Shown: in pieces, positions 13,661-64,000 of the stretch
Layout: every line of letters starts with the position of its first letter
How positions within the stretch are numbered: position 1 is the stretch's first letter
DNA from: Malacoraja senta
Lineage: Eukaryota
Length of the DNA: 64,000 nucleotides
Reading direction: 5' to 3'
NCBI GenBank assembly: GCA_038087875.1
Contig: JAXLNO010005688.1
Span: forward strand, 124,001 to 188,000
Translations under genes and position numbers: made by a program
Notes under the pieces: model-generated
Seen by the model: only the letters and a program-made list of their open reading frames with translations
What the model was told of the DNA's origin: nothing
Database searches by the model: none

Positions 13661-13904
13661 TTAATGACTCATTGATATTTCTAGGATTGGGGGCAGTGAA
13701 TCCATAATGTTTAAAACAAAATTACACTGAATTCACAATTATAAAAAATCTGATTATCAGAAACATTTAACACCAGCACAAAGGCTAGTTGGTAGTGGTG
13801 ACTGTCGAGGCATTTCAAGTGTAGCTGCTGCCTTATCCTACTTGAGATCGATCATTTCTTCAAGCCTTTACTTGCAACAGTTCATCACAATTTTTCCATC
13901 TTAC

Positions 13905-14012
13905 CTCTCCTTTTTTTTGTCCACCAAACAATTACTGCCAAGACAATAGCCAGCAATATCAGCACACACAGGGCAATAAGGCCTATGTGCCTGTCTTTCT
14001 TCCTATTTCCTT
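13905..14012 (-). CDS. MHC class I-like gene B, transmembrane exon, intact
   Basis: cttatttttcag| acceptor and G|GTAAGA donor, 108 bp, phase 1-1. Translates EGNRKKDRH-IGLIALCVLILLAIVLAVIVWW-TKKRR. Confidence 0.85.
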
Positions 14013-15899
14013 CTGAAAAATAAGAATGCATAATTTTACAAATCAGTTGTTAAGCTGTGCAGCTAAATAGATTGGCACTGTCTGAAGACTTCAGTGTGAA
14101 GAAGGGTCTCGACCCGAAATGCCACCTATTCCTTTTCTCCAGAGATGCTACCTGGCCGCTGAGTTACTCCAGCATTTTGTGTCTATTTTTGGCGCTATTC
14201 GAGGTATATAAGATGATACGGTGTTTTGAATCACGGAGTTCTGCAGCATGGCAAAGGGACAATATCTGTTCTGTACAACTCCATGATCCATGGCACCATC
14301 ACAGCCACAACTTAATTAATGAAAGAAGGCGAATTGAAAGCAAAAATCTTTAACCCTATATAATCTAACATCTGTTTTGGGGGAAATGCTGGATTCCTTT
14401 CAGTAATGCAGAACATTTAAGTAATAACAAAACAATAAAGTGCATTAACAGGGCATTAACAGGAAAATTGTAGAAAGAAAGAGATGCAGATACTGATTTA
14501 CACAAAAGCTTTAGTTTAGTTTATTGTCACGAGCACTGAGGTACAGTGAAAAGCTTGTGTTACGTGCTAACCAGTCAGTGGAAAGAATATACATGATAGA
14601 CACAAAATGCTGGAGTAACTCAGCGGAATAGACAACATCTCTGGCGAACATGGACTCAGTCAGAAGGATTGTGACCCGAAACATCACCTATTCCCTTTCT
14701 CCTGACCAGCTAAATTATTCCAGCAATTTGTGTCCATCTTCGGTGTAAACCAGCATTTGCAGTTTATCCCTACACATGGACAGGTGACATTTCGTTTACG
14801 GACCTTTCTTCAAACTTTGTTTGGGAAATTGATTTGAATTCTTTGAAAATGCAACAGGAACCCGTAGACAATGTATATTTGAGCAGCAGGTGTGCACAGT
14901 CTAAAATTCAAAAACAAAATGATGGAAAAGCAGAATAGGTAACAAAATTGGAATGAGAAACAAAAGAAATACAATATATTGTAGAGATCCAAGCGTCGTG
15001 AACAAATCAATGTTTTTTTAAGAAATACAGTTTTGGCACACTCACGTTTAGTAAGGACTTGAGCAAAGTTCCTCGGGCACACCAGTTGACTGGCGATTAA
15101 CTCATCACCAACTCCCACCAAAACCCTGTCACATGATAGTCCCAGCTCCCATGACGAGGGTTCTAGCAATAAGTGGCCTGACCACCAGATGTCTCCACAA
15201 TATCTGGATTTTCGTAAGATATCTGATCAAGTGATGCAAAGGCACATGGCTTATGACATTGGGGTAATAATTAGCATGAATGGAAAAACAATTAAGAGCA
15301 AGCAGAGAGTTGTCTTAAAGGAGTGTTCAGGTTGGGAAACTGCAACTGCAGGTGGGGAATCAAGGCAAGAAAGTGAACTACTTATCGTTGGTATTAAGAG
15401 CAGATGAAGGGACTGGTGGCGCTGTAACCTAGATTGCTCATGCTACATAGATAGGTTGAAAATTATGTTCTGAAGTCAACAGTCTTCAGAGTGAAACATC
15501 AGATTCCTTAGTTGTGCATTATTCGAGGGAATCTTCAAAAGTGGACATTTGTGTAGGTTAGTGCAGCATACCTGGAATCAAACTACTACGATCGCTGTTT
15601 GTCAGGCAGTTATGTTTTTCGTTGTTAAATCTGTAACTTGCGTCAGGGAACTTACTTCATTAGGTTTAGTTTTATTAAATTAGATAATACTATACATAAA
15701 TACAAACTCAAAAACAATAGATAGAGCAAAGAGGATGATACAGAGTACAGAATATAGTTCTCAGCATTGTAACGCATCAGTTCCATGGACAATGTTCAAT
15801 GTTCAATGAGGTTGAGGTCAATCGGGCATTAAACCTACATTATGGAAGGACCCTTCCGAAGTCTGATAACAGATGGAAAGGGGGGTTCCTGAGTCATGC

Positions 15900-16230: not shown

Positions 16231-16646
16231 CATGACCGAATATTGGATAAATTCATGCCAAGGAACATGAAGCTCTCAATCATTTCCACTTCGGACCATT
16301 GATTCAGATTGGGGCATGTACTCCCCCAGTGCCTTGCTGTTAATCACATCATGAGGAAAGATTCATTTTTTATTTAAACATACCTTTCATGGATATCAGT
16401 TCCACCACTGAGAATTCCAAATACTCCTTCCTTGTATTTTAGTTATTTATTTATTTTTGATAAATGTTCTGTTGACAAAGTCTTCTGCTCATGTGGAGAG
16501 TGGGTGCTGATTACGTGATTGCTTAGAGCAACACTACTAAACAAAGAAAGTTTAAGCATCTTGGAATATGGGATGTATTCACGATGATTAAAATGGAAAC
16601 AACAGAAGATAATGATTATCTATGAAAGAATATTTAACGTTCTTAC

Positions 16647-16913
16647 CACAGATGATGGTCTTCCCAACGGGCAGGCTGCTGTGATCGACATGACAGGAAT
16701 ACTGTTTCCCATCATACGGATCATACTCAAGGACAGACCTTAGATGATATGTTCCATCGTTGTTGGGTATGACCCCAGAAGATTTGGTCTCAGAGACATC
16801 TTGACCATTCTGCAACCAGCTGACATTGATGGCCGGTGGGTAAAATCCAAACACAATGCAGTACAGGACTGAATGATCTTCAGGGCGGGCAGCGAGAGTG
16901 ACCTCAGGGGAAA
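16647..16913 (-). CDS. MHC class I-like gene B, alpha3 (Ig C1) exon, intact
   Basis: cttgtag| acceptor and G|GTAAGA donor, 267 bp, phase 1-1. Translates VSPEVTLAARPEDHSVLYCIVFGFYPPAINVSWLQNG..PNNDGTYHL..YSCHVDHSSL. Confidence 0.92.
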
Positions 16914-18227
16914 CTACAAGACAATAAGTTGGTTATTTTCACCCATCAGAAAATATTCTTCAGTCCACTACAACCACCAAGTTACTGTCCACATCTGCCC
17001 CATGTTGCCTCTTTCGTCACCATTAACCAACCACGTGGTTTAAAAGGGATCGTACGCTCCCTGTTAAGACAGTACACAAGACAGTTTGAAAACACGTACC
17101 ATTAAATTTAGGAACAGCTTCTTCCCCGCTGTTATTGGACTACTGAATGATTCTCATGTAAGATAAGATGTTGTCCTGATCTTCCAACCAATCTCATTGT
17201 GATCCTTGCAACTTTTTTGATCTGCACTTTCTCTGTAACTGTAATGCTGTGAAATTGTAACCCGATATTCTGCACTCTGAATATTTTTATCTTTGGACTG
17301 ATCGACTTGTGGATGGCTTGATTGCACATGTGTAGTATGATCTGATTGGATAACACACAGACAACCTTTTGACTATATCTCAGTTCACGTGACAATAATA
17401 AACTAATACCAACGGCAAATCTTTTCACTAGGGCATATTATTGACAATAATAAATAATTGACAAGTTACGAAATGAGGGATAATTGGGGAGGGGACAAGC
17501 TTAAAATTGGCAGTATTTTCACTCCTCTTCAATAAGAGATAAAAGAGACCAGTCATTTGTTTACAAAATCTCTTTTTGCAGAGTGTGGTCATTCTCTGGC
17601 GCTCTTGACCCCGGATATTTGTGAAGACAAACTCATTGGAAGTATTTAATGTGGCGGTAGTTAAACTTTTGAAAGAATGGAGAATTGGAGTGCTATGTGG
17701 AACTGACACTGAACCGGAGTTGATGCCTGAGGAACGTCTGCCATGATCATATTGAAAGGTGGGCAGGTTTGAGGACCGAATGGCTTACATGGAGGAGAAA
17801 ATCAGGCTTCTGAATGATCGTTCCATAAACTAGGGTACTGTCCAATTTACCACTACCCCATTACAGACAGTGGACTTTGTTTATAGAACTATGTAGGAAG
17901 GAACTGTAGATGCTGGTTTATACCGCAGATAGACACAACATGCTAGAGTAACTCAACGGGTCAGGCAGCATCTCTGGAGCGAAGGAATGTGTCACTTTTC
18001 ATGTCGAAACCCTTATCTAATGGAACTGGTGTGCTACATTGCTGAGAACTATATGCCACACGCTGTACCTTCCCCTTTGCTCTACCTTCAGTACTTCAGT
18101 TGACTTGATCATATATATGTATGTTGTTATCTCATCCAATTGGATAGCATGCAACTGTACCTGGAAAGTTGCTGCCTTACAGTACCACAGACCAAAGTTC
18201 AATCCTGACAATGGGTGCTGTCTATAT

Positions 18228-22520: not shown

Positions 22521-22704
22521 GAAATGGATTGACTAATTGAATCAGATTTAAACTGGGAGGAAGTATTCAACATGGAGGCTGGAGGAGTGGAAAACTTATC
22601 CCTGCCCCGTCCAATGAGAATATATAGCACATAGAACAGTACAAGAACAGGACTTTCAGCCTGCAATGTCCATGTGGAACAGGATACCAAGTTAGACTGA
22701 GGCA

Positions 22705-26390: not shown

Positions 26391-26666
26391 CTTTTGTGGT
26401 CAGATATGTATTTCCAATTGCATAGTATGTAAGCCATAGATCCACACAGTCTTTTTCTAACAAGCTCTTGAAATAACGGTTCATTTTTTAATTCTTGTCC
26501 CATTTCTCTTTGAAGGGCTCAGCTATTGGATCACGCACCATCCACTTTAGTTTGTCCTTATCAAAACTAAATGCATATCTTCCATCAAAAGCCAACTTCA
26601 ATATCCCTACAGTGGGACTGTGATCGTTCACCTCACAACCAAACTGTTCTTGAACGTAGTGATAAT
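26391..26666 (-). pseudogene. MHC class I-like gene B, alpha2 exon with in-frame premature stop
   Basis: ttcttaaag| acceptor and G|GTGAGT donor, 276 bp, phase 1-1. Translates YHYVQEQFGCEVND..AFDGRYAFSFDKDKLKW..KEKWDKN*KMNRYFKSLLEKDCVDLWLTYY; TAA at 26488-26490. Not in the ORF track. Confidence 0.9.
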
Positions 26667-26814
26667 CTTTAAGAAAAACATAATCATTATTTGATTAATT
26701 GTTATGACTGGATAATTTCTGAACACCAGGGTCCAAGTCATTTATATATGTCACAAGTAGCAAGGGTCACAGCACAGATCCCTGCAGAACTCTACTTGTC
26801 ACTGAACTACAGCC

Positions 26815-34689: not shown

Positions 34690-35790
34690 GATAAGTCTCC
34701 AGGTCCTGATAGGATATTCCCTAGGACATTGAGGGAAGTTAGTGTAGAAATAGCAGGGGCTATGACAGAAATATGTTAAATGCCATTAGAAACGGTAATA
34801 GTGCCGGAGGATTGGCGTACTGCGCATGTTGTTCCGTTGTTTAAAAAGGGTTCGAAGAGTAAACCTAGCAATTATAGACCTGTTAGTTTGATGTCAGTGG
34901 TGGGCAAATTAATGGAAAGGATACTTAAATATAATATATATAAGCATCTGGATAAGCAGGGTCTGATTAGGAACAGTCAACATGGATTTGTGTCTGGAAG
35001 GTCATGCTTGACTAATCTTCTTGAATTTTTGAAGAGGTTACTAGGGAAATTTATGAGGGTAAAGAAGTGGATGTTGTCTATATGGACTTCAGTAAGGCCT
35101 TTGACAAGGTTCCTCACGGAAGGTTGGTTAAGACGATTCAATTGTTGGGTATTAATGGAGGAGTAGCAAGATGGATTCAACAGTGGCTGAATGGGAGATG
35201 CCAGAGAGTAATGGTGGATGGCTGTTTGTCAGGTTGGACGCCGGTGACTAGTGGAATCTCATGTAGATAGGGTGGTAAAGAAAGCTTTTGGTGTGCTGGC
35301 CTTTATAAATCAGAGTTCAACTAAGTTACAGAGAAAGGTTGAACAAGTTAGGTCTTTATTCTTTGGAGCGCAGAAGGTTAAGAGGGGACTTAATAGAGGT
35401 CTTTAAAATTATGAGCGGGTTAGACAGAGTGGATGTGGATAAGCTTTTCCCATTGAGAGTAGGGAAGATTCAAACAAGGGGACATGACTTGAGAATTAAG
35501 GGACAGAAGTTTAGGGGTAACATTAGGGGGGACTTCTTTACTCAGGGAGTGGTAGCTGTATGGAATGAGCTTCCAGTGGAAGTGGTGGAGGCAGGTTCGA
35601 TGTTATCCTTTAAAAATAGATTGGATGAGTATATGGACGGGAAAGGAATGGAGGGTTATGGTCTGAGTGCAGGTAGATGGGACTAGGGGGGAAGTATTTA
35701 TTTTTAATTAAAAAAATAATTTAAAAAATGTATATAATAATACATAAAAAAAATTTAAAAAATGTCCGAGATGGCCTGTTTCCGTGCTGT
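34690..35790 (+). mobile_element. CR1 LINE fragment of the same young family, with two internal deletions
   Basis: Highly similar to the reverse complement of 18228-19860, with the same tail; segments are missing near 35255 and 35315. Confidence 0.92.
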
Positions 35791-38786: not shown

Positions 38787-41700
38787 AATAGTAAGATTAA
38801 ACGAGAACTTACCTAAGTTTGAAGTTTGATCTTAATTTTTTGAGGAGTTACGTAGGTGATTACGTGAAGAACCCCGCCAGTGCGCCTGCGCGTCAATCTT
38901 CAAAGCAGCGGTGTGAAATCACAAAAAACAACAACCGAAGTAATTGAGTCTCATAATAAAACGAGTAATACAAGAACTTCCATCTGATCTTTATGATAGA
39001 GGGTAGGGTCGTGGTGGGCACGTAATCACCTACGTAACTCCTCATAAAATAAAGATCAAACTTCAAACTTAGGTAAGTTCTCGTTTAATCTTACTATTTT
39101 ACTTCGGAGTCACGTGAGTGACTACGTGAAGATTTTAAAGCTTTGTGATTTCATGCCGTAGATCAATCCCGGCTTCTCACTGCATTGATTGACTCTGAAC
39201 GAGAATAATCAATCATGCATTCATAATAACATTTGTACCATAAAATGCAGTAATTCATTTCATTAATGAAATTAATCAGATCCCCTTTAAACCAGAGGAA
39301 TTTACACAGAACTTAAAATAGTTTCTGCAAACAATCCCGCATTAACAATAGGCCGATGGTAAAAATGTTGAAACGCAACTCATTGGCCCACCCGGCGGCT
39401 GCGAGGATATTGTCAACGGGGACGTCTTTTGCCCGGCCGCCGACGTTTCTGCTGCCCAAGCCGAGTGAGACGTAAAAACATCAGTGTTAATACCAGCAGC
39501 TGTTAAGACTTCTTTTATCCATCTGAAAATAGTCTGTACTGAAACTCTCTTGTGTGGTTTCTTGTGCGTGATCAACAACCCAGTTTCCGTATTTCTCAAA
39601 TTCTTTGTGACCTCAATGTATTGTAACAAATATGTCTTAACACAGAGACAAGAATATTTTGGATATGCTGCTAGCATAATTTTAAATCCTGTCACACCTG
39701 GCCTACTTTGCTTTAGTAGGTCATGGATATAGAATGTAACCTTGTTTTCAGTTACTTCCATCCTGTCTATTTGTAATTTTCCAAGTGTTTGCACTAATTG
39801 TGCTGTCACTAATGCCCTAAGCATAACTACTTTCATACTGAGCTTGGCCAAAGGTAAAGACACACTTGGTGACCATTCACGAAGTAGTTTCAGTACCACA
39901 CTTACATCCCAGATTGTCATGTACCTAGGTTTCGGTCGTTTGGAATTAAAGATTCCTTTCATTAGTCTGGAAACAATTGGGTGTGACCCAATTTGGTTTC
40001 TTTCCGAATACAGAACCAAATATGAGGACAATGCAATTCTGGCTGAATTAATTGCACTACAACTCAGACCTTCATCATAATAAAGTTTTGACAGAAATTC
40101 TAAACATTTGAAATATCTGCAGTACTATATTGCACATTCTTTTGTACACAGAACTCTTCCCATTCCTTAATTTAAGAAAGGTACTGTCTTTGAGTGCTCG
40201 TCCTCCAGGCTGCCGTAAGCATGCCCACAGTACGCTCAAACAGTCCTCGTCCCAGAAAAGGCATTCTTAAAACCTGCAAATCAACAAATCCAAACGATCA
40301 TATAATGGATGTTGTTCCCCTGTTACAGGGTGCAGCAATAAATTACTCCTTTTTGGGACTATCATCAACATTTCAGTTGTTAATTCTAATATCAACGGAT
40401 ACCATGGCTGTGTAGGCCAATATGGTACTACCAATACACTGCCTGATTTTAAGCAAACATTGGCTTATGAGGCAGAAAGGTGGAAATATATTTGAAAACA
40501 TACCACCCCAATGTAGCGAGAAAGCATCAATCGCCACTGATCCTGGATCTGGTTTCCATGAGACATATCTCGATAGCTGATGATTCAAGTCGATGTCGGG
40601 CATTCCAAATCTGATTACTATATCATTGAATACCTCTTGATTCAACATCCATTCTTTATTATCATGGAACTTTCGTGACATGGTGTCTGCTATCGTGTTC
40701 ATTTTACCTGGTAGATAGATAGCTGAAATCCAAATGTTCTTTTCAATACACCAAGACCAAAGTTGATTTACCATTTTGTCACATGACACCGACTTAATTC
40801 CACCCATATCATTAATATAGGGAACTGCTCTTGCGTTTATTAATTTGAACGAACCTCCTTTTAGTTGTTAGAACAATAAGCTTGGTCCATAGAAACCTCC
40901 TAAAAGCTCCAAGTATGTAATTCCCCATGTCTGCAGTAACAATGACTCTTCCTGATTCCATCTGCCTCCGCAGCTAGATATTACATCAGTTGCACCCCTT
41001 CCTAGTGCACTGGCATCAGTTTGTAAGATCATGGAAGGTTGTTCAATCAGCACTTTGCCGGAACTGCTTGAGACATGTAGAATCCACCACTGCAGATTAG
41101 AAACAGCATTTGTTGTTAGTTGCATGGTTCTATCAAAATTACCAGCATTTACTCTCAGTGTCTGTTCTTTGACTCTCTGCAGCTGTTGATAATGTAATGG
41201 TCGATACTGGACTGCTGGGAATCTACTAATTTTCCCAGTACTCGAGCCACCTGTCTGATTAAGGGTTTTTGCTCGTTTAACAGATTACTGCAATCTTTAA
41301 TCAGCTCCACCCTTTTTTTCACTGGGCAAAGTAATTTTCATTTGGGCTGAATCAATTGTGAACCCCAAATAATCAATCGAGGTACATGTTGTTAACCTTG
41401 ATTTCTTTTGATGAATTTAGAAACCCCATACTTTCAAAAGTTGATTTCATAACTGCAACAGATGCTACTGTTGACTGTTTTGTCCTTCCTATAATCAGGA
41501 CATCATCCAGGTATGACATTGGTACATGCCCCCTGGCTTCTCAGCAACCCCAGAATTGATTTTAACAATTTTGTGAATATTCTGGGAGCGGACGTTAACC
41601 CATTAGGCAGAGCTTTTAACCGCCCTAACTGGTTCATCCATGTAAATTTAAGATACTTCATATCTTCCAAGTGAACAGACACTGAACAAAAGGATTCAGA

Positions 41701-43543
41701 CTTGTCAAGTCTATAATAATCCTACATCCTCCATCCTTTTTGATCGAGGGAATATATTTGACCCAAATTGGTGAATTTGGTAGACTGATTCTTCAATAAC
41801 ACCTTTTATATATAGGGTTTTGAAGCGCAGCTTGAACCTCCATTACTTTGCAAAGTGGAGAGTTCTGCTAGGAACATGCTGGAGAGGCAAATCATAATTT
41901 GGATTGAATTCAATTCGAAATCCTTGTATATTATTCAGAATTACCACATCTGAAGTAATCTTCTTCCAATTGTTATAGAAGAGACGTAATCTGCCTCCAA
42001 CTTTTCGACTTAATCCAGTTAGTATGTTCCCATGAGAACCAGGCGCACCTACCTCCTGAGTCATTTGAGTACTCTGAGATCCCTGGATTCTCCCGGATGC
42101 ACGACCACTGGTTCTTACTCCCGCTGCAGGCCGCCAGCTACGTCCCTGCGTTCATGAGCGACTTGGTCCTGGTCCAGGATCCGTATGACGTCTGAAAGGA
42201 TACTTCCTCTTTACAGACTTTACAACCATTGATGTTTTCATCAATCCTGTTTTCGCTTCAACTTCCAACTCTTTAATACGTCTCCCGAGATCCTCTCCAA
42301 AGCGTAAGTTGGGTAATTGTATATTACTTGGTTTGCAGAGTGCTGCGAATTTCGGATTCATAATAGGCCGTATAGCACCTTCCTCAGACAATTGATCTCG
42401 AAGTGGGTGCTGCATAGCAACCCCAGTGCTTCCTGATGCAACTTCGTCATCTCTTGGCTGTTATCAGCTATTCTGGTAAAAGCAGTTATTCCAGAACCCA
42501 GCAGCTTTAATATTCTCTGCAACTGATTCCATATAATTTGGTTCACTGCTGGTGCTTTCAGCAACCCACAGTTACTTGGGGTCTCCTGCTTTCTTGCAGT
42601 CTCATCCATCTCCTGCTGTTCCAGCTGATGGGAAACCAAGTAATTTATTAAGGAGGCCAGTTCTTCTCCGAATGGCTCTCCTGATCCTGACGGGGCAGCG
42701 AATCTTACTGCCAGGGGTGGAACACCTGGCAGCTGCCGTTCATCGCCTTGTACAGCCTCACCGTCAGAGTCGGGGTCTGAAATCTCATGACCCGTAGCAT
42801 GCTCCTCATCCCTGAGGGTGCATTCCATCAGCCCTGTACCAGGAGCTTTTGAGCTGCTTCCAGCAGCTTGGATTTCAGTACACTCCTCCCTGAGTGAACG
42901 TTGCTCCAACAGCCTATGTAAAAGGCTTTCTATTTGGGCAATACGGTCGAAAGCAGTATCTAGCCCTGTACCAGGAGCTGTTGAGCTGCCTCCAGCAGCT
43001 TGGATTTCAGTACACTCCTCCCTGAGTGAACTTTGCTCCAACAGCCTATGTAAAAGGCTTTCCATTTGGGCAATACGCTCGAAAGCAGTATCTAGCCCTG
43101 GAGGTACTTCCATTGCCTGGGACTCCCTCCGTGGTCCGTCGGGATTTAAACTTCGCCTTTCGCCCGACAGGCGCTGAATGTGTTTTAATCAGCCCCAGGT
43201 CCACAGTCGCTATGCTCACCGCTGGCGACTGTACCGGGGTTTAGAGGCGGTTGGTCTCTAACCGCAGACTCCCGACTTTCCCGACTTTTTGTCGGCTGAG
43301 TCGCTCGCCTCTCCCCCCTGCCCGTTTTTTCCATGGCGTCTGAGGAAAAAATCCCCACAGACCCACAGTAAACGGAATGGAAAATTTGAAAAAAGTTTTT
43401 ACTTACCTTGTAGTTGAAAAACTACAAACCACTAGAGGAGCTCTGCTCCTCACGTCCGTTTGCGTCAAGGCGTCTGACTTAATGACGCGCACGCGCACTG
43501 CGGGGTTCTTCACGTAGTCACTCACGTGACTCCGAAGTAAAAT
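38787..43543 (-). mobile_element. DIRS1-type tyrosine-recombinase retrotransposon, full length, decayed (copy A)
   Basis: Inverted terminal repeats plus an internal complementary region (about 39020-39132). Contains a gag-like ORF1, RT (SYLDD), RNase H, a methyltransferase-like domain (DAFS..W..FPPF) and YR fragments with catalytic Arg codons mutated (AQL, HSAW). Many frameshifts. Confidence 0.93.
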
Positions 43544-49779: not shown

Positions 49780-49940
49780 TACCCTATCTCTACTCCTCAC
49801 AGTTTGATATATTACTGTCAGGTCTCCCCTCGATCCCCGACATTCCAGAGAAAACAATCCAAGTCAGTCCAACTTCTCCCTGTGGCTAATACCCCACTAA
49901 TCCAGGCATCTTTCCGGTGGACCTCCTCTGCATCCCAAAG
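49780..49940 (-). mobile_element. CR1 fragment overlapping the end of the gene A reading frame
   Basis: Minus strand gcagaggaggtccacc..cctggattag..ttggattgttttctctgga..ggggagacctgac resembles the CR1 VQRRFTRM.PGL..LGLFSLE..RGDL region seen in the other copies here. Confidence 0.75.
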
Positions 49941-50129
49941 GAAGCTGATTGTGCTTCATGGTCCTCTCCTGGTCTCTGCTGTTGCCAGCTGGTCCCTGTT
50001 CATTGAGAATTGTTCTCCTTTTCCTCATCTTCCTGCAATCAATTCCAAGGATGATCCCCAGGAGAATGAGAGGAACGATTACAGCTCCAGTCACGATCCT
50101 AATCTTTATATCTTCTTTCGCTGTCCTCT
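49897..50129 (-). CDS. MHC class I-like gene A, transmembrane + cytoplasmic terminal exon
   Basis: caacag| phase-1 acceptor. Translates ERTAKEDIKIR-IVTGAVIVPLILLGIILGI-DCRKMRKRR, then about 40 aa to TAG at 49897-49899: a hydrophobic span with a basic stop-transfer. Confidence 0.75.
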
Positions 50130-54744: not shown

Positions 54745-55410
54745 TGCTTTGCCCACTCGGTGGAACTGCTGTCTAACAGCGCCAGAGACCCGGTTCAATT
54801 CTGACTACGGGTCCCGTATGTGCAGAGTTTTGTACCTTCTCCCCGGGACTTGCGTGGGTTTTTGCCTGGATCTCCAGTTTCCTCCCTCAGTCCAAAGACA
54901 TACAGGTTTGTAGGTTAATTGGCTTGGTATAATTGTAAATTGTCCCCTAATAAGTAATATAATGTAAGTGTGCAGGGATCGCTGGTTGACGCAGACTCGG
55001 TGGGCTGAAGGGCCGGTTTCTGCGCTGTATCTCTTAAACTAAAACCACATTCCATTGACTATCAATAATTCTGGGGAATTAGATAACCACAAATTATTAA
55101 TGGGTGGCACAGTGGCGTAGCGGTAGAGCTGCTGCCTTACTGCACCAGATACCTGGGTTTGATCCTGACTACAGGTGCTGTCTGCAAGGACATTGTATGT
55201 TCTCCCTGTGACTGCGTGGGTTTACTCCGGGTGCTTCGGTTTCCTCCCACACTCCAAATACATACAGGTTTGTAGGCTACTTGGCTTAGGTAAAATTGTA
55301 AATTGTCCCCAGTGTGTTGGTTAGTGTAAATGTACGGGGTGATCACTGTTCAGCAAGGACTCGGTGAGCTGAAGGGGCCTGTATCTGCACCATATCTCTA
55401 AAGTCTAAAA
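54745..55410 (+). mobile_element. Two adjacent V-SINEs (about 54745-55045 and 55103-55410)
   Basis: Two copies with V-domain and tail. Confidence 0.8.
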
Positions 55411-55508
55411 CCAAAATCCACAGTTTAGTTACGAGTGTGTTGAGGTTGTTATCTCAGTCTAGGAGGTTTATGGTCTCAAGTGATCAGACCCATTGACTTG
55501 CCACTTAC

Positions 55509-55781
55509 CCTGTGGAACATTGACTCCCTGCAGCAGAGTTGCATGTTCGATGTAACAGGAGAATTTTGCCACATCTTCTCTACTCAGTTGAATTGTATTC
55601 TTCAGCTGGTAAGTCCCATCCCAATTGGGCAACAGATCACTGGATTCAGACTCGTGGACCCCCTCACCATCTCTCAGGCACGTTACATCGATAGCCCGTG
55701 GGTAGAAGCCTGTGGCAAGGCAGGAGAGTCTCAGTGATTGCGACCCATCACGTTTAATCCCAATAAACACCTCAGGGGTTT
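55509..55781 (-). CDS. MHC class I-like gene A, alpha3 (Ig C1) exon
   Basis: ttgcag| acceptor and G|GTAAGT donor, 273 bp, phase 1-1. Translates ETPEV..LSCLATGFYPRAIDVTCLRDG..LLPNWDGTYQL..FSCYIEHATL. Confidence 0.95.
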
Positions 55782-56354
55782 CTGCAAGTGTAAGAAGCTT
55801 CAGAATCAGTGAAGACATGAACAAAAGCCTTCAATTGTAAGATCAATGCAACTCACCTCTTTTCCAATCAGTTTTTTCACTGGCTGAACTAAATTTTCAG
55901 CCTAGACCCAAAATGCTAGAATAAATCAGCAGGTCAGGCAGCATCTCTGGAGAGAAGGAATGCCCAGAGATGCTATCTGACCCACTGAGTTACTCCAATA
56001 TCTTCTATCTTCGGTGTAAGCCATCATCTGCAGTTTTATCTTGCACAAAGTTTACAGACTTTTTTCTCTTCATTTTGCATTTCTGGCAAAACAACAAAAC
56101 ATTTAGTTTTAATATCACTGACATGCTCCTTATCATAGCTCCAGACTTTAACTGACAGCGCAGATGAAAGGGGAATGCAGGGCCCAATGGAGGAGTATAA
56201 CTCAACATTGGGATTGATACTGTAGACATGATTGCTTCTATTTGTTCACGAATCTCTGCTGAAACATAACACTAAATATTCCAAGAGGGAATGGGAGGAA
56301 GAAGTTCTTCAAATAGAGAACTGTTGGAAATTGAATGTCACCTTCCTAAGGAGT

Positions 56355-59300
56355 AATAGTAAGATTAAATGAGAACTTACCAGTTTGAAGTTTGATCTTT
56401 ATTTTATGAGGAGTTACGATGAGGGATTACGTGAAGAAGACCCCGTCCATCCGCATGCGCATCAATCTTCAAAGCAGCAGTGTGAAATGACAGGCAATAG
56501 TAATTGAAGTATAATAGTAAGATTAGAGAAGACTAGAACTACCAGATGACCTTTATGAGGGTTGGGAGCGGAGGGCACGTAATCCCACATCGTAACTCCT
56601 CATAAAATAAAGATCAAACTTCAAACTGGTAAGTTCTCGTTTAATCTTACTATTTTACTTCGGAGTCACGTGAGTGACTACGTGAAGATTTCAAAGCTCT
56701 GTGATTTCATGCCGCAGATTCAAATCCAGGCGTCTCACTGCATCGATTGACTCAGAATGAGTAAATGATCAATAACGCATCAAACCATAACATTGCTTTA
56801 AACACATTAACGGTTTATTTTGTAAAGAAACAATAGCAACCCCTTCTATCTCAGGGGGGGGACTATAAAACTGAACTCAAAACATAATGGGCAAATACCC
56901 CCGGTTTGGCAATCGGTTTATGATACAAACTTTTGGAACATCAATTCATTGGACCATCCTGTGGCCGCGAGAATATGGTCTCTAGGGACGTCCATTACCC
57001 TGGCCGCTGAAGGTGATGCCACCCTGGTGGAATGAGATTTAAAATTGTCAGTGTCAATCCCAGCATAAAGCAGAACCTGCTTTAGCCACCTTGAAATAGT
57101 CTGAACTGACATCTTTCTATGCGGCTAATAAACAATGCTGATTCCGCACCTCTTAGGGTTCTGGTAGCCTCGATGTAATATAACAAACATGACCCCACAC
57201 ACAGGCGGGAATCTGTAGGGTATGCCGAAAAAGTAATCTTACACCCTGTCGCCCCTAGTCTACTCTGCTTGAACAAATCATAGATGTAAAAAGTGACGGC
57301 ATCTGCTGACACTTCCATCCTATCTAGTCGCAGCTTCTGTAATGTCTGCACACGTTGGGCTGAAACCAACGCCATAAGCATGACTACCTTCATGGTGACG
57401 TTGGCGAAAGACAGGGCTGTGACAGGAGTCGACTGACAAAGGAGCATAAGAACTTCGCTTACATTCCAGATTAACGAATACCTGGGCCTGGGAGGATGGG
57501 AATTAAAAATTCCTTTCATAAATCTAGATAATAGAGGGTGTGTCCCCTCAGAATATAGTTCTGATCCCATGGATAAGTATGAAGACCGTGCACTTCTGGC
57601 TGTATTGATCGCACTATAGCTTAACTTATGATCGAAATAGAGCATTGACAAGAATTTCAGCACATCTAGGATGCCTGCAGTTTGATATGAAATATGATAT
57701 GCCGTAAGCAGAACACCTCCCACTTTCTTATCGAAGAGATGTACTGCTTTTGTGTACTATCCCTCCAGGCCACAGTGATAACATCCACGGTGCTATCGGA
57801 TAGTCCTCTCCCCAGGTTTGCCCTTCTTAGAATCTGCAAATTAATAGATCAATACCATCATGTAAAGGATGTTGATCGCCAGTTACCGGGTGCACCAGTA
57901 GGTTTCTATGTTAGGGAACAATCATATGAGGCTGTGTGGTCATCTGTAAAACGAGATGGAACCATGGCTGAGTCGGCCAGTCGGGTACCACCAATACTCC
58001 TGAGGCAGAGACCTGCTTGATTTTTTTGCAGACGCCGACTGATGAGGCAGAATGGAGGTAATGCATATAAAAACATTCCACCCCAATGCAGCGAGAATGC
58101 ATCGACTGTTGCTGCCCCAGGATCTGGTTCCCATGAAACATATTTAGGCAACTGGTGGTTTAGTCTGGATGCAAACAAATCGATATCTGGCATCCAATAC
58201 CGAGCAACAACATCTTTAAATATGTCATGACTCAACATCCATTCTGTGTTGTCATTGAATTGGCGTGACCTAGTGTCTGCCACTATGTTGAATCTACCTG
58301 GTAAGTAGATTGCTGAAAGCCAAATGTCTTTGGGAATAAACCAGCTCCAGATCTGATTAGCCAATCTATCACAAGATTCCGACCTGACTCCACCCATATG
58401 ATTAACATAAGCCACAGCTGTAGTGTTGTAAATTTGAACCTGCACATGCAAATGACTCTTGGTAGGGCAATAAGCTTTAAGCCCATAAAACGTTCCCAAA
58501 CGCTCTAAATAATTGTTCCCTCGTAATTGCAGAAGAGATGCCTCTTCCCTACTCCATCTACCTCCACAGCCGGAAAAAGTATCAGTAGCACCCCAACCTA
58601 GAGCACTAACATCAGTCTGTAAAACTATGGAAGGTGGTTCAACCAACATTTTCATGGAACTACTTGAGACATTCATGATCCACCATTGTATTTCAGCAAT
58701 GGCTTCAGCTGGTAATTCCATGGACCTATCAAAATTCCATGGACCTGAATGTGTCCGCAGTCTCTGTTCTTTTGCTCGTTGTAATTGTTGATAATGCAGA
58801 GCTGGAAAAGCAGCCACTAATTTACCAATCAAGCTCGCCACCTGTCTGATTGTAGGTCGTTGTTCAGCAATGAGCTTGATACCACCTTCAATTAACTGCA
58901 GCCTTTTATCCCTGGGCAGAGTCACCAACATGTGATCTGCGTTAATAGTGAAGCCCAAATATTCAATAACTTTGACTGGTGTTAATTTGGATTTACCTGG
59001 ATGAATGATGAACCCCAATTTCTCAAAGTGAGTATAACTACTGAAACGGATGATTTAGCTGCGTCCCGAGTCTTTCCTACAATTAAGATATCGTCCAAAT
59101 AGGCCATTACGATATGACCCTGAGCTCAAAGAAGCCCCAGAACTGCTTTTTATCAATTTGGTAAACAATCTAGGAGCTGAGGTTAATCCATTAGGCACTG
59201 CTTTGAATTGCCATAATTGACTCATCCAGCTAAACTTCAAATATTTCCTATCAACGCAATGAACAGACACTGAGTAATATGCATCTTTTAGATCTATGCT

Positions 59301-61116
59301 TGCCATATAACACCCTTTGGAAATCAGCTGTTAGCAGTAGGAAAAGTTTACATTTTGAAATGTCTATACTGTACAAAAGGATTAAGGCTCGTCAGGTCCA
59401 GGATGATTCTACATCCTCCATCCTTTTTAGACCTAGGAAATATATTGGACACAAGCTGGTGGGGTTGACGAACCGCCTTCTCAATCACCCCTTTATTGCA
59501 TAATTCCTCAAGTTCTGCCTGTATCTCCATATTCTCTTCGTGTGAGAAAATGAGTGTCCGGCTTGGAACATGCTGAGTGGGTGGACACAAATTAGGATAT
59601 AATTCAATTCGAAACCCTCTATACTGCACAGCACAAACGGATCTGATGTTATCTCCTGCCATTCTTTCAGAAACAAGTGTAACCTACCCCCAACTTGTAA
59701 ATATTTCCCATTTAAAATGTTTCTATCCGGAACAAAACCACCTACCTGCATGGTTATCGGTGGAACTTGTTGCCCCCGGTTCCTCATGGGAAAATTCATG
59801 TTTGCCCGTGTGCCTGTAGCAGGGCGCCAGCTGCGCATATTCGGGATGACCGGCTCGTTCCTTCACCATCCCCGGTCATTGCACCCCGTCGGTAGGGGTA
59901 CTGCCTCCCAACCATTTTGCTGCCCATCGGCGCTTTGATTAACCCCACTGTCTTTGCCTCATCATCGAGCTCTTTTACTCGCTTTGCGAGGTCCTCCCCA
60001 AACAGTAGATTCGGCAGTTGAACATTGCTGGGCTTGCACAGCGCTGCAAATTTAGGGTGAATAGTAGGGCGTATGCACTTCAAAATGTGCACTGCACAGA
60101 AGACCTAAAGCATCCTGTTGTGCTTCAGACAGGTGCCCCTCGTCCACCGTTCTGGCGAACGCAGTAATGCCTGCAGCAAGCAACTTAAGCACCCGCTGGA
60201 GTTTTAATTCTTGTGCCCGAACACCAACTCCCATTTGGCCCCATATCACATGGTTAACCACCAGTATTTTCAGTAAGCCACAATTAACCGGGGTTTCATA
60301 CCTCTTTGCTGTATCATCCATTGTCTGCTCTTGGAGCTGATGGGAGAGTAAATAGTTAATTCTTGTGGCCAACTCCTCACCCAAAGGCTCCCCTGATTCT
60401 GTGGGGATAGCAAATGTTGCCGCCAAATTTAGTATTCCAATCTCATGCCCTTCACCCCTTGGGCTCTGCTCACCCACTGCTTTGGCGTAAGTGTAAAGCT
60501 GACCCATCAAACTCTCCTCCTCCATGAGGGAGCGACTGTGCAGCCCTATTCCAGGCGCTGCTGGCACAGGCTCTCCAACAGCCCGGCGTGGACACCACTC
60601 CTCCTCCCGTAGTGTATCCTTTCCGAGCATCCTCTCCATCAGGAGCTCGATTTGAGATAACCGTGTAAGAACGGTCTCCCTTTGCGGAGGCGAATCCTCC
60701 TGGCCCGACTCGGAGTCAATGGGCCTAGCAGACTTAGAAGTATCCTTACGCCCTAACGGCGCGGCGACGGTGCTCACAGGCAACGTGTCTGCAGTCGCTA
60801 ACCCAACTGCTAACGACGGTACAGGTGAACTAGGTGGGCACCCGCTACCGGCACTCCCCCAAGCTTTTAGCAGCGGGTCGCCTCGCCTTCCCCTTAGAAG
60901 CTTTCTGCATGTTGATCTCGCCCTGAAAAACAAGCGTTTCCACCAGAAAGCATCCTCCAACTAAGTTGAGCACTTACCACGAGGATTTAAACTTACCCGC
61001 TGGAGGAGCGTTGCTACTCCAACCGGTCGCTGCACCATGCGTCTGGCGTAAATGACGCGCATGCAGCTGGACGGGGTCTTCTTCACGTAGTCACTCACGT
61101 GACTCCGAAGTAAAAT
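56355..61116 (-). mobile_element. DIRS1-type retrotransposon, full length, decayed (copy B), in the alpha2-alpha3 intron of gene A
   Basis: ITRs and ICR (about 56577-56688). ORF1 60960-59800, RT (AYLDD), RNase H/MT ORF 59018-57906 (DLFASRLN..ALPPF), YR 57723-56918 (AQR, HSTR, GW). Frameshifted. Confidence 0.95.
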
Positions 61117-61344
61117 AGAGGCAAATAGAGAATCTGATTGGGTTTCTGATGATTTCAGCGACAGACCCTTCAGGCACAAGGTCAATGCTAAACATAAGAC
61201 CAAGATACATATCCCTCCATTTCCTGAATATCTATATGACTGTGGATAGATGACACTGGTACAATATTTATCTTTCATTTGCACTTCCTACCCACTGGCT
61301 CCATCTAAGAGGCACGTTGCCAGACAATTTACTGATACCCTCGG

Positions 61345-61648
61345 CCAAGAACAGGGTGGCGAAGCGGTCGAGCTACTGCCTTACAGCGCCAGAGACCTGG
61401 GTTTGTTACTAACTAACGGGTGCTTGTCTTTACAGAGTTTGTACGTTCTCCCTGTGACCTGCATGGGTTTTATCCCAGATCTTCGGTTTCCCCTCACACT
61501 CGAAAGACGTACAAATTTGTAGGTTAATTGGATTGGTATAAATGCAAATTGTCCCTAGTGTGTGTAGGATAGTGTTAGTGTGCGGCCATGGCTGCTCGGT
61601 GCGGTCTCCGTGGGTTTCCGAGCTGTATCTCTAAACTAAACTAAATAA
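61345..61648 (+). mobile_element. V-SINE (HE1-like)
   Basis: Head, V-domain and (aaact)n tail. Confidence 0.82.
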
Positions 61649-61744
61649 TTACTCAAGTGACAGCCTGAAGTGCATGATATTTTCCACCTGATCTATCCAG
61701 AGGATATCCTCTGGCCCATCAGTCAGAGTGCCTACGTCGTGTAC

Positions 61745-62026
61745 CTCTCCTATGTAGTGCTTCTTGTCCACACTCCAGATATATCAGCAGCCACTTCACA
61801 CAGTCCTTCTCCAGGAGATCTTTGAAATACTTATTCATGAAGGTGTTGACATTCCACCGATTTGCTAGCATCTGGAAATCTAGACGTAGTGCAATCCAGC
61901 GCATTCTGTCCTTGTCAAAAGCACATGCATCCTCCCCATCATAACCCACTCTGACAAACCCATCAGTGGCATTGTCACTGTCCACTTCACAGCCGCAGAA
62001 ACCCTGCAGAAAGCAAACAGCTGGGG
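61745..62026 (-). CDS. MHC class I-like gene A, alpha2 exon
   Basis: ctcag| acceptor and G|GTACAC donor, 282 bp, phase 1-1. Translates (T)PAVCFLQGFCGCEV..YDGEDACAFDKD..W..RW..LLEKDCVKWLLIYLECGQEALHRR with the canonical C101/C164 pair. Confidence 0.95.
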
Positions 62027-62959
62027 CTGAGGTGGAGAATTTGGGTAGGGGAGAGGGGATGGAAGGGAGAGGCATTTACAAATCAGTTCTCAGCATGGTA
62101 CAAACAGGCATAACAGAACACAACATGGAGCTGTACAGCACAGGAGCAGGTTTAGTTCAGAGATATAGCGCGGAAACAGGCCCTTCGGCCCACCGAGTCC
62201 GCACCGACCAGTGGTCCCCGCATATTAACAGTATCCTACACAGACTACTTTTCTTTCCAGCTTTCTCCACCCTACTCCATCACTCTAAATGGTCCTGATC
62301 TCATATGTTTTCTGTCCATTTTGCCACAGCATGCTGCCTGACTCGTTGAGTTCCTCCTGTTTGTTTTTAATTCAGATTGAGAGCACCTGCAGTTTGCTGT
62401 GATTCCATCTTAGCACAATGGATGATCAGTGTGGATTCAGTGAGCAGAAGGGCCGGTTTCCATGCTGTGTGACGCAATGACTCAATGACCCATGGTTTAT
62501 ATACTGTGGGCATGGACTAACCTCAAGTGTTGAGGGGGGAAGCTTTACTATTGCGGATGTAACACTAAAGAAGTTTTGCTGTGTCAGAAGGGTAGAACTC
62601 AGATTTTTGCACTGTCGTACATAAAGAACAGAGGAAGAAGTGCATTGTCAGATGGGCAATGCTATACAGATCCAACAGGTACGTCTGAAGGTTAAGGCAA
62701 TGCAGATGGGAAGTACATCAAGGCTGTTGCACTGTGTGGGATTGCTACACTCTCTGTGGATTGTTGCCAATATTGAGCGAATGCTGGATTAACAGAATAT
62801 TATTACTGAGGGAATACCTCATAGTCACCATCAACCAGCTTAAATCAAGGTCCCATCCCTAGAAGATCAGGCTATAAATAAACTAATGGTTTCTCCCTCA
62901 TTCCAGCCCAACAAAACATATGATCCAATCCATCCACTTATTACTGGTGTTGAATATCA

Positions 62960-63600
62960 AATGCTTAACCCATAAAGAGACTATCACCAGCCAACTGTTA
63001 TGATTGTGTGTTCAGCAGTTAGGACACATTAAATATAGACGATGGGCCGTGTCTCTATCAAAATGTGATGGAGTAAATGTCTGAAACAGCATCAATGGTG
63101 CTGAAGTGAAAAAGGTTGAGAGTTTCTGGTTCCCCTACTGCCTCAGGAGACTAAGGAAATGCGGCATCTCCAATGACTCTTACAAACTTCTACAAATGTG
63201 CCAAAGAAAGCACACTGACAGGTTGCATCACAACTTAGTTTGGAAAGAGTTCTAACCAAGACCGCTGGAAATTGCAGAGAGGTGGAGAAGTAGCACAGTC
63301 GATCACACAAACATGATTCCCCACCAGTGAATCCATCTGTATTTCAACTGGTTCAGGAAAGCAGACAACATAATCAAAGATTCATCCCGCTCTGGTCAAT
63401 CATTCTTCTTCCTGCAGAAGGTATGTAAGCATTAAAGCGTGCATCACCAGACTCAGTAACTGTTTCCTCCCCTATGTTATCAGGTTTCTGAACAGTCCTC
63501 CCTTATGCTAGGGTTCACCTCAACCCCATTGTAGACACTGGACATTGTCTCTGGCACTGGTGCATTAAAATGCTGAGAACTACATTCTGCACTCTTTGCT
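62960..63600 (+). mobile_element. Rex1/Babar-type LINE remnant in the alpha1-alpha2 intron of gene A
   Basis: Degenerate LRRLRK.G..TL.NFY.C..ES.L.GCIT..G..KLQR..IIKD.S..RSIK..T.RL.NCF pattern. Confidence 0.65.
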
Positions 63601-63770
63601 CTACCTATTGTACGAGTTTGGTTTGATTGTATTTATGAATAGTTTTCTTTGATGTGATTGACTAATGCAAAAAAAGTGTATCAGAGAATCATGTGTCAGC
63701 AACAAAACTAAAACAAAATCCATTTGTGTCATCACTGGGTGTCTACCCCAGGTCCGGTCACGACACTTAC

Positions 63771-64000
63771 TCGAGATACCATGTTGCTGTTGGTAGACTA
63801 TCTCAGCATTTCCTCTGACAATCCCATGAAAACCTGCAACTGTGATGGCCATTGAATCCCAGTGATCATGCGGGAAAGACTGGGCCATCCATCGCTGTCT
63901 GGGAACAGCCCGCTCTAGTGTGCTGTCAAAATATGCTATCTGGAGGTCATCCAGCATTGGTACCATACTGTACTCAGGCAGCTCACTCAATCCATGGTTC
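63771..64000 (-). CDS. MHC class I-like gene A, alpha1 exon (5' part outside window)
   Basis: Translation ..NHGLSELPEYSMVPMLDDLQIAYFDSTLERAVPRQRWMAQSFPHDHWDS..GIS matches the class I alpha1 pattern (LPEF..V..LDD.QI.Y.DS..RAVPR..WM...W). Ends at a phase-1 donor A|GTAAGT at 63770. Confidence 0.92.

What the first reader, a model, noticed from the sequence alone, without database searches (positions are those of the whole stretch)
61745..64000. Class I gene A has a non-peptide-type, Cys-rich binding platform
By manual alignment to HLA numbering, the classical anchors are mostly replaced: Y59H, Y/R84Q, Y123A, T143L, K146R, Y159L; only W147 and Y171 are kept. The N86 glycan sequon is lost (H86), while an N-A-T sequon appears early in alpha2. 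The conserved VG of alpha1 reads VP. The alpha1 helix (MAITVAGFHGIVRGNAEIVY) is unusually hydrophobic. Alpha2 has six Cys (about 93, 99, 101, 124, 164, 174) instead of two. The substitutions are seen in the sequence. That this is a nonclassical, possibly lipid- or metabolite-binding molecule with extra disulfides or covalent dimers, in a known or new elasmobranch lineage, is inference.
Basis: partly seen in the sequence, partly recalled or inferred. Interest (0 to 1): 0.72.

Follow-up and report, generated by a model that had tools for sequence, protein, structure and literature searches.

The report
Skate UGA-sister class I gene copy
This is a real skate copy of an old shark-and-ray MHC class I-like gene whose greasy, anchor-less groove is built for something other than peptides, probably a lipid. 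Only one of the four extra cysteines is invariant across the lineage, and this copy looks like a duplicate under relaxed selection.

Summary
**Observation: confirmed.** A minus-strand class I gene lies at alpha1 63771-64000 (cut by the window end), alpha2 61745-62026, alpha3 55509-55781 and TM/tail 49897-50129.

**What it is.**
- It belongs to a one-gene-per-species lineage found in four batoids and eight sharks, which NCBI labels "MR1-like".
- That lineage is monophyletic (100/100) and sister (96/91) to UGA, the lineage of PDB 9CH4.
- A clade with MR1 is rejected (AU p = 2e-5).
- The window's gene B, 23 kb downstream, is a broken UGA copy. Sawfish has the same A-then-UGA order.

**Groove.** The lost anchors, the lost N86 sequon, the new alpha2 sequon and the hydrophobic alpha1 helix are lineage-wide. 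The groove positions are more hydrophobic than UGA's and more conserved than the rest of the platform.

**Cysteines.**
- C101 and C164 are the canonical pair.
- C99 is invariant in the lineage.
- C174 is present in 8 of 12 orthologs.
- C124 is batoid-only.
- C93 is unique to this copy.

**This copy.** "VP" (A26P) and an Ig-core Trp-to-Cys change in alpha3 are also unique to it. Its own replacements fall on conserved sites as if unconstrained.

Extra disulfides are not supported. This scan had already met the lineage on other pieces of this genome.

The parts
63771..64000 (-). Gene A alpha1 exon, 3' 230 nt. About 31 nt of this exon and the leader exon lie beyond the window end.
   Evidence: Open frame ending in the donor A|GTAAGT. 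Pfam MHC_I E 5e-5. 97.8% nt identity to the L. erinacea copy in L001, whose exon starts 31 nt further upstream.
62027..63770 (-). Intron 1 of gene A
   Evidence: K2P distance 0.091 and 14 gap events against L001, compared with dS 0.069 and no indel in the ectodomain exons.
61745..62026 (-). Gene A alpha2 exon, holding Cys 93, 99, 101, 124, 164 and 174 and the N-A-T sequon. An alternative acceptor lies at 62020.
   Evidence: Pfam MHC_I E 5.9e-16. Batoid gene models carry the extra T-P-A given by the upstream AG. 94.9% nt identity to L001.
55782..61744 (-). Intron 2 of gene A, holding a long interspersed repeat with large ORFs (about 57082-60960). A similar element lies at 39342-43113.
   Evidence: ORF lists. 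No Pfam hit for its ORFs, so the element type is unverified.
55509..55781 (-). Gene A alpha3 (Ig C1-set) exon. The invariant core Trp is replaced by Cys.
   Evidence: Pfam C1-set E 6.8e-13. Trp in 11 of 11 orthologs and in L001, Cys only here.
49897..50129 (-). Gene A connecting peptide, transmembrane and cytoplasmic exon through the stop codon. The tail has no Tyr-based sorting motif.
   Evidence: Acceptor cag|AG in phase 1. Collinear with the last exon of the P0001 gene model, 87% nt identity with one in-frame 9-nt indel.
26392..26667 (-). Gene B (UGA-type) alpha2 exon with an in-frame stop codon. Context only.
   Evidence: tblastn hit at 87% to L. erinacea UGA-type P0069, with a stop inside.
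16633..16914 (-). Gene B (UGA-type) alpha3 exon. Context only.
   Evidence: Pfam C1-set E 1.9e-20. 84-87% identity to P0069 and P0234.
13903..14049 (-). Gene B transmembrane exon. Context only.
   Evidence: tblastn hits to P0069, P0234 and P0236.

Best explanation
Gene A is a skate copy of an elasmobranch-wide nonclassical MHC class I lineage. That lineage has one gene per species in sharks and rays, lies directly upstream of UGA in the MHC-Ib cluster, and is UGA's sister.

The lineage keeps the class I fold and the C101-C164 bond, and keeps W147 and Y171. It has replaced the other peptide-terminus anchors. It lines the groove with small and hydrophobic residues that have been frozen since sharks and rays split. 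An invariant unpaired Cys sits at floor position 99.

By analogy with UGA, the molecule most likely holds a lipid-like or other hydrophobic ligand and shows it at the cell surface with beta2-microglobulin. Its tail has no Tyr-x-x-hydrophobic sorting signal, unlike UGA.

The window's copy is a diverged duplicate, with about 9-13% intron divergence from the annotated L. erinacea copy. Its reading frame was kept for most of its history. Its own amino-acid changes now fall on conserved sites as if selection were relaxed, so it may be failing or already non-functional.

Shown here: gene structure, lineage membership, sister relation to UGA, synteny, residue conservation, groove hydrophobicity, and the relaxed pattern in this copy. 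Inferred: ligand class, beta2m pairing, the free state of the extra Cys, and loss of function in this copy.
For: Identity and structure:
- Exons and splice sites. Pfam.
- Closest protein is P0001 (L. erinacea) at 90% in alpha2. Twelve one-per-species orthologs show 54-72% identity.
- Careful ML tree: A clade 100/100, UGA clade 100/100, A+UGA 96/91.
- 9CH4 is titled 'shark nonclassical MHC class I, UGA' and is about 88% identical (my count from the printed alignment) to the B-lineage zebra shark protein P0242.
- The AF2 model of the sawfish ortholog has pLDDT 89, and its best PDB match is 9CH4 at Z 24.2.

Synteny:
- The order and orientation match the window.

Groove:
- 37 groove positions have mean KD 1.15, against 0.48 for UGA and -0.09 for classical-like.
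- The top-residue frequency is 0.89 at groove positions against 0.81 elsewhere.
- Long-term dN/dS to sawfish is 0.22-0.25, and 0.10-0.15 in alpha2.

This copy:
- dN/dS against the L. erinacea copy is 0.65 overall and 0.94 in alpha3.
- Eleven window-derived replacements hit residues of mean conservation 0.88. Four fall on invariant columns, which equals the neutral expectation of 0.395.
- Nine P0001-derived replacements hit residues of mean conservation 0.61, with none on invariant columns (P = 0.011). Mann-Whitney P = 0.0012.
- The neighbouring gene B has a stop codon and no detectable alpha1.
- A third L. erinacea copy (L003) is a pseudogene.
Against: - No ligand, expression or beta2m data exist for this lineage. 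Lipid binding by UGA reaches me only as a personal communication quoted in a review (PMC12562908).
- All 336 visible codons are open.
- Exons show 1 in-frame indel in about 1 kb between the copies. Introns show about 1 gap event per 110 bp. The frame has therefore been under selection for most of the time since duplication.
- The counts behind the relaxed-selection test are small (11 against 9).
- The Trp-to-Cys change rests on one base and could be an assembly error.
- I could not show that the window and P0001 come from the same genome. If they are orthologs in two skate species, 'duplicate' would be wrong, although the derived-change pattern would stand.
- The leader and the first 10 residues of alpha1 are outside the window.
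Confidence: 0.7

Rival explanations
1. The window copy is a fully functional paralog that has taken on a new role. On this reading the new Cys residues (C93, and Cys in place of the alpha3 Trp) and the changes at F-pocket positions 95 and 116 were favoured by selection.
For: The frame is open over 336 codons, with far fewer indels than the introns. The estimated dN exceeds dS on the window branch (0.025 against 0.018). The changes at 95 and 116 are conservative hydrophobic swaps at groove positions.
Against: The counts are too small to separate a ratio above 1 from neutrality. The replacements include an Ig-core Trp, a Pro inside a beta strand, and loss of an invariant Pro and Val, which are typical of decay. 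The neighbouring gene B in the same block is dead.
Confidence: 0.3
2. The lineage is the cartilaginous-fish counterpart of MR1 and presents small metabolites.
For: NCBI names it 'MR1-like'. MR1 chains are the best PDB sequence hits for alpha2 alone. By my reading of the MR1 sequence P0088, alpha1 from D37 onward and alpha2 align with MR1 without gaps; the alignment shows this for alpha2.
Against: A clade of lineage A with MR1 costs 57 log-likelihood units and is rejected (AU p = 2.3e-5). The Schiff-base Lys43 of MR1 aligns with Ala, Thr, Ile or Cys. The full-length best PDB hit is UGA, not MR1.
Confidence: 0.04
3. It presents a fixed set of special, for example very hydrophobic, peptides, as HLA-E/Qa-1-type molecules do.
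For: W147 and Y171 are kept. The fold and groove length are class I-like, and chicken BF2 and fish class I are close structural matches.
Against: Positions 7, 59, 84, 123, 143 and 159 are all non-anchor residues, and K146 is swapped to R. Gly at 69, 76 and 97 and Ala at 123 open a deep nonpolar cavity shared with UGA.
Confidence: 0.1
4. A naming rival: this lineage is the unpublished 'UFA' rather than an unnamed UGA sister.
For: [quoted passage not shown] UFA maps in an MHC-Ib cluster (PMC10751288). Lineage A fits all of this.
Against: No UFA sequence is accessible here. No PDB entry is close to lineage A other than UGA.
Confidence: 0.25

Closest known systems
Shark/ray UGA (PDB 9CH4, 'shark nonclassical MHC class I, UGA')
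   Same: Sister clade (96/91) and adjacent in the genome. Best sequence match (E 3e-60) and best structural match (Z 24.2). The two share Y22, I33, T66, the A-G-F-H-G stretch at 68-72, G76, V95, G97, L116, A123, W147, M152, Y155, F156, L159, L160 and Y171.
   Different: Only 38-45% identical. Lineage A has H59 (UGA Y), C99 (F), W167 (L), and hydrophobic residues at 62, 63, 67 and 80 where UGA is charged. A lost the N86 sequon and gained one in alpha2. UGA tails carry Tyr-x-x-Ile, while A tails have no Tyr.
MR1
   Same: The same lengths across alpha1 from D37 onward and across alpha2 (A is one residue shorter in the 13-19 loop), high alpha2 similarity (E 7e-16), and the NCBI label.
   Different: Not a clade with it (AU p = 2.3e-5). 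No Lys43. The groove is much more hydrophobic (1.15 against 0.06).
CD1
   Same: Works-like only: the peptide anchors are lost and the groove is strongly hydrophobic and conserved.
   Different: No specific sequence relationship. A lemur CD1b is a 2.3-2.5 unit long branch far from A in the quick tree. A lacks a tyrosine endosomal motif.
Chicken YF1*7.1 (a lipid-presenting nonclassical class I)
   Same: A high structural match (Z 23.4): a class I-derived molecule with a hydrophobic groove.
   Different: Independent origin and about 30% identity.
Classical class I (UAA) and UDA of cartilaginous fish
   Same: Fold, exon plan, the C101-C164 and alpha3 disulfides, and MHC linkage.
   Different: Only 2 of the 8 anchors visible in the window are kept, and F7 in orthologs makes it 2 of 9. 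From my memory of Almeida et al. 2020, which is not retrievable here, UDA keeps 8 of 9. A is not in the classical-like clade.

Membership tests
MHC class I heavy chain (fold and exon plan) | alpha1/alpha2 platform, C1-set alpha3 and TM, one domain per phase-1 exon, with the C101-C164 and alpha3 disulfide cysteines | tested here: met
   Pfam MHC_I and C1-set. Splice phases. AF2 model of the ortholog at pLDDT 89, matching class I chains at Z 22-24.
Classical class I (UAA) | Nine conserved peptide-terminus anchors (Y7, Y59, Y/R84, Y123, T143, K146, W147, Y159, Y171) | tested here: not met
   Only W147 and Y171 are kept. Lineage-wide states are H59, Q84, A123, L143, R146 and L159, with F7 in orthologs.
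UGA-sister lineage (NCBI 'MR1-like' genes of elasmobranchs; P0001, P0151-P0161) | Monophyly with these genes | tested here: met
   100/100 support. The window gene pairs with L. erinacea P0001 at 100/100.
UGA-sister lineage | Position directly upstream of UGA, in the same orientation | tested here: met
   In the window, A lies at 49.9-64 kb and the UGA-type gene B at 13.9-26.7 kb, both on the minus strand. [quoted passage not shown]
UGA-sister lineage | Signature residues: C99-G-C101, the A-G-F-H-G stretch of the alpha1 helix, the alpha2 N-x-T sequon, and no N86 sequon | tested here: met
   All are present in the window copy and in 12 of 12 orthologs.
UGA (PDB 9CH4) | Falls inside the clade that holds the 9CH4 orthologs | tested here: not met
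   Sister clade, not inside it. 38-45% identity.
UGA (PDB 9CH4) | Tyr-x-x-Ile cytoplasmic motif | tested here: not met
   UGA-type P0234 and P0236 end with Y-Q-T-I and Y-E-N-I. The A tails have no Tyr.
MR1 | Orthology (a clade with MR1) | tested here: not met
   AU test p = 2.3e-5 against A+MR1.
MR1 | Lys43, which forms the Schiff base with the ligand | tested here: not met
   Aligned residue is Ala in the batoids and Thr, Ile or Cys in sharks.
CD1 | Specific relationship to CD1 and a tyrosine-based endosomal sorting tail | tested here: not met
   CD1b is a distant long branch. No Tyr in the tail. The hydrophobic groove is an analogy only.
UFA (unpublished CD1-like elasmobranch lineage) | Identity with the authors' UFA reference sequence | not testable with these tools
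   No UFA sequence or paper is in the library. It is only mentioned in PMC10751288 and PMC12562908.

The most novel reading that the evidence does not exclude
The UGA-sister lineage is a still-unnamed antigen-presenting molecule as old as the shark-ray split. Its invariant free Cys99, next to the invariant His59 at the A/B-pocket end of a very hydrophobic groove, tethers or senses its ligand chemically through a disulfide, a thioether or a metal. That would be a thiol counterpart of MR1's Lys43 Schiff base.
Probability: 0.08. Interest if true: 0.8.

Novelty: new member of a known kind. Interest (0 to 1): 0.4.

Why it matters
Sharks and rays carry at least two neighbouring, anciently separated class I lineages with non-peptide grooves: UGA and this sister. 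This supports the view that lipid-type presentation is as old as the MHC itself. It also offers a second, even greasier molecule to test, one with a conserved groove cysteine.

For this particular window the value is mostly corrective. Most of the striking substitutions are lineage design rather than decay. The 'Cys-rich' look mixes one invariant residue, two clade-limited ones and one private change, in a copy that seems to be slipping out of selection.

Tried and rejected
- **MR1 orthology.** Suggested by the NCBI name and the alpha2 hits. Rejected by the AU test and the missing Lys43.
- **Extra disulfides.** Coordinates of the AF2 model are not exposed, so I could not measure Cys-Cys distances. 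I used strand parity and helix position instead, which is inference.
- **Naming the lineage.**
  - The UDA and UEA papers (PMC7002201, PMC8454915) are not held.
  - No UFA/UGA primary paper turned up.
  - The sawfish supplement tags the ortholog only as 'MHC-Ib'.
  - I suspected PDB 8GM8 might be UFA, but could not see its title.
- **Intronic repeat.** Pfam gave nothing for its ORFs, so my 'DIRS-like' impression is unverified.
- **Earlier notes.** A look-up by sequence returned nothing.
- **Whole-protein searches.** I could not submit the spliced window protein to the reference-only tools. I used single exons, P0001 and P0151 as proxies. The AF2 model was made on the sawfish ortholog and, through my choice of range, lacks beta-strand 1.
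Full report
**1. What is in the sequence**

The finding lies on the minus strand. Translating 63740-64000, 61700-62060 and 55400-55900 and joining the exons gives a class I heavy chain.

- alpha1 runs from 63771 to the window end, with donor A|GTAAGT.
- alpha2 ends at 61745, with donor G|GTACAC.
- alpha3 is 55509-55781.
- A connecting-peptide, transmembrane and tail exon lies at 49897-50129.

All junctions are phase 1, as in class I genes. Pfam recognises alpha2 (MHC_I, E 5.9e-16), alpha1 (5e-5) and alpha3 (C1-set, 6.8e-13).

Comparison with the L. erinacea locus L001 shows that only about 31 nt of the alpha1 exon, plus the leader exon, are missing beyond position 64000.

Two AGs, 6 nt apart, precede alpha2. 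All four batoid gene models carry the extra T-P-A or similar given by the upstream AG. I therefore place the exon start at 62026 rather than 62020.

**2.

With HLA numbering anchored on conserved landmarks, the window protein has H59, Q84, H86, A123, L143, R146, W147, L159 and Y171. It also has V25-P26 and an N-A-T sequon at about 107-109. Cys sits at 93, 99, 101, 124, 164 and 174.

**3. Which gene family**

A search of 1.84 billion representatives with alpha2 alone found one close protein: P0001, at 90% identity. The remaining hits, apart from the short second L. erinacea copy P0019, were at 43% or below.

P0001 is an L. erinacea protein that NCBI calls 'MR1-like'. Searching with it recovered one protein per species in Pristis, Mobula, Hypanus, Pristiophorus, Heptranchias, Scyliorhinus, Stegostoma, Hemiscyllium, Mustelus, Cetorhinus and Chiloscyllium, at 54-72% identity. 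The level then drops to about 35% for other shark class I genes.

The best solved relative of P0001 is 9CH4 chain A (E 3e-60). Foldseek and VIA-align give its title as 'Crystal structure of shark nonclassical MHC class I, UGA', released 2026-03-18.

9CH4 is about 88% identical, by my count from the printed alignment, to zebra shark P0242. P0242 belongs to a second one-to-few-copy lineage gathered with P0069. The window's second class I gene, gene B, belongs to that same lineage.

A careful ML tree of 52 proteins gives these results:

- Lineage A is monophyletic at 100/100, and its internal branching follows the batoid/shark split.
- UGA is monophyletic at 100/100.
- A and UGA are sisters at 96/91.
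- MR1 groups with a tetrapod sequence and classical-like fish sequences.
- Forcing A together with MR1 costs 57 log-likelihood units (AU p = 2.3e-5).

Rows left out: gene models that looked fused or very long, and, in the careful run, the CD1b sequence, which was a 2.3-2.5 unit long branch in the quick tree.

**4. Synteny**

The sawfish ortholog P0151 is encoded at CM019888.1 13,956,125-13,977,896. That is LOC127585976 in the supplement of PMC10751288. There it is tagged only 'MHC-Ib'. It sits after TRIM39-like genes and is followed by three MHC-Ib genes on the same strand, annotated 'F10 alpha chain-like'. The sawfish's three UGA-type proteins (P0236, P0241, P0244) are encoded on that same 19.9-Mb contig, so these are probably those genes. 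I did not match them by coordinates.

In the window, A (49.9-64 kb) lies upstream of the UGA-type gene B (13.9-26.7 kb), both on the minus strand. The A-then-UGA arrangement is therefore old.

**5. Which of the odd features belong to the lineage, and which to this copy** (alignment, column table)

Lineage-wide, in all 12 orthologs:

- F7, H59, Q84, A123, L143, R146 and L159.
- No N86 sequon, and an N-S/T-T sequon in alpha2.
- An almost invariant, hydrophobic alpha1 helix.
- Gly at 69, 76 and 97.
- C99 in a C-G-C motif with the canonical C101.

Partly conserved:

- C174 is present in 8 of 12 orthologs.
- C124 is present in batoids only; sharks have Tyr or Phe.

Private to this copy:

- C93 (Phe or Val elsewhere) and P26 (Ala or Val elsewhere).
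- L95, V116, L138 (an invariant Pro elsewhere), N145 and H180.
- In alpha3, Ala for an invariant Val and Cys for the invariant Trp.

**6. Groove character**

I compared 37 HLA-defined groove positions across groups. Mean Kyte-Doolittle hydropathy was:

| Group | Mean hydropathy |
|---|---|
| Lineage A | 1.15 |
| UGA | 0.48 |
| MR1 | 0.06 |
| Classical-like sequences | -0.09 |
| Multicopy shark group | -0.09 |

In lineage A these positions are more conserved than the rest of alpha1 and alpha2 (0.89 against 0.81). That is the opposite of a classical molecule.

More than half of these positions hold the same or a similar residue in UGA. The differences cluster at the A/B-pocket end: H59 against Y, C99 against F, and W167 against L. 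They also include four alpha1-helix positions (62, 63, 67, 80) that are hydrophobic in A and charged in UGA.

Long-term dN/dS between skate and sawfish is 0.22-0.25, and 0.10-0.15 in alpha2. The lineage is under clear purifying selection.

UGA and UFA are reported to bind CD1d-type lipids. That report is a personal communication quoted in PMC12562908. By homology and chemistry, a lipid-like ligand is the most likely cargo for lineage A. This is inference.

**7. Cysteines**

C101 and C164 form the canonical pair. Positions 95, 97 and 99 point into the groove in class I structures, so 93 and 99 share that face but lie about 20 Angstrom apart along one strand. Position 124 has the opposite parity to the groove-facing 123 and points away from the groove. 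Position 174 lies one turn beyond Y171, at the end of the alpha2 helix.

None of these can plausibly pair with another. This rests on established class I topology, not on measurement, because the model's coordinates are not exposed.

The interesting residue is the invariant, presumably free C99. C174 could in principle make an intermolecular bond, but it is not conserved.

**8. State of this particular copy**

Divergence from the L. erinacea copy in L001:

- Introns differ by K2P 0.09-0.13, with about one gap event per 110 bp.
- Exons differ by 2-6%, or 13% in the tail, with a single in-frame 9-nt indel.
- The frame has therefore been protected for most of the time since the two copies split.

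Signs of relaxed selection:

- dN/dS between the copies is 0.65, and 0.94 in alpha3.
- I polarised the changes with eleven other species.
  - The 11 window-derived replacements hit residues of mean conservation 0.88. Four of the 11 fall on invariant columns, and the neutral expectation is 0.395.
  - The 9 P0001-derived replacements hit residues of mean conservation 0.61. None falls on an invariant column (P = 0.011).
  - Mann-Whitney P = 0.0012.
- The window branch is also longer in the tree (0.080 against 0.047).

Context:

- Gene B in the same block has a stop codon in alpha2 and no detectable alpha1.
- A third L. erinacea copy (L003, the P0019 gene) has a stop in place of C164 and lacks alpha1.

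I read the window copy as a duplicate whose constraint has recently relaxed. I put the odds that it is already non-functional at about even.

Caveats: the counts are small. The key Trp-to-Cys change is one base. I could not prove that the window and L001 come from the same genome.

**9. Relation to earlier notes of this scan**

The scan has already met this lineage on other pieces of the same genome, and called it 'UGA-sister', with some copies intact and some dead. I reached the same placement independently, from the PDB title, the tree and the synteny.

Those notes also assign 'UFA' to a different gene with a GPI-type end. I could not check that, so I cannot exclude that lineage A is the unpublished UFA.

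**10. Verdict**

The 'non-peptide groove' reading is supported at the lineage level. The 'Cys-rich, extra-disulfide' reading is not supported.

This is a new member of a known kind, in a copy that may be decaying. The lineage deserves biochemical study. This window adds little beyond what the scan already had, apart from the invariant C99 and the copy-level evidence of relaxed selection.

Noticed in passing
window 13903-26667 (-): Gene B is a UGA-type class I gene (84-87% identical to L. erinacea P0069 and Rhinoraja P0234). It has an in-frame stop codon in alpha2 and no detectable alpha1 exon upstream, so it is probably a pseudogene. Three N runs (10230-10364, 20411-20610, 20805-21092) lie in or near its alpha2-alpha3 intron.
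   Followed up: partly
window 57082-60960 and 39342-43113 (-): Two copies of a long interspersed element with 200-370 aa ORFs. One sits inside the alpha2-alpha3 intron of gene A. Its ORFs have no Pfam hit, so the element type is unknown.
   Followed up: partly
L003:10001-14232 (L. erinacea JAMYXN010000412.1): The gene model P0019 is built on a dead copy of lineage A. A stop replaces C164, alpha1 is absent, and alpha3 has a one-codon deletion.
   Followed up: yes
L001:12983-13020 and P0001 residues 181-192: The NCBI model P0001 reads 36 nt into the alpha2-alpha3 intron, adding 12 residues that only the zebra shark model P0157 also extends (with an unrelated insert). In the window the same read-through meets a stop. 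This is probably an annotation artefact or a minor isoform.
   Followed up: no
P0181, P0120, P0195 (Callorhinchus milii): Three elephant-shark class I proteins share the N-x-Y-x-K-x-x-L-E-x-D-C alpha2 motif of lineages A and UGA, but form their own long-branched clade of unresolved position. They may be the chimaera counterpart of the A+UGA pair.
   Followed up: no
window 18775-20116 (-) and 34780-35686 (+): LINE-type reverse-transcriptase ORFs (Pfam RVT_1, E 3e-16 for 18778-19404), with similar fragments elsewhere in the window.
   Followed up: partly
one search hit list: Among skates, only the two L. erinacea proteins of lineage A were found. No lineage-A protein came up for Rhinoraja longicauda, although its UGA protein is present. 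The lineage may be decaying or unannotated in skates.
   Followed up: no
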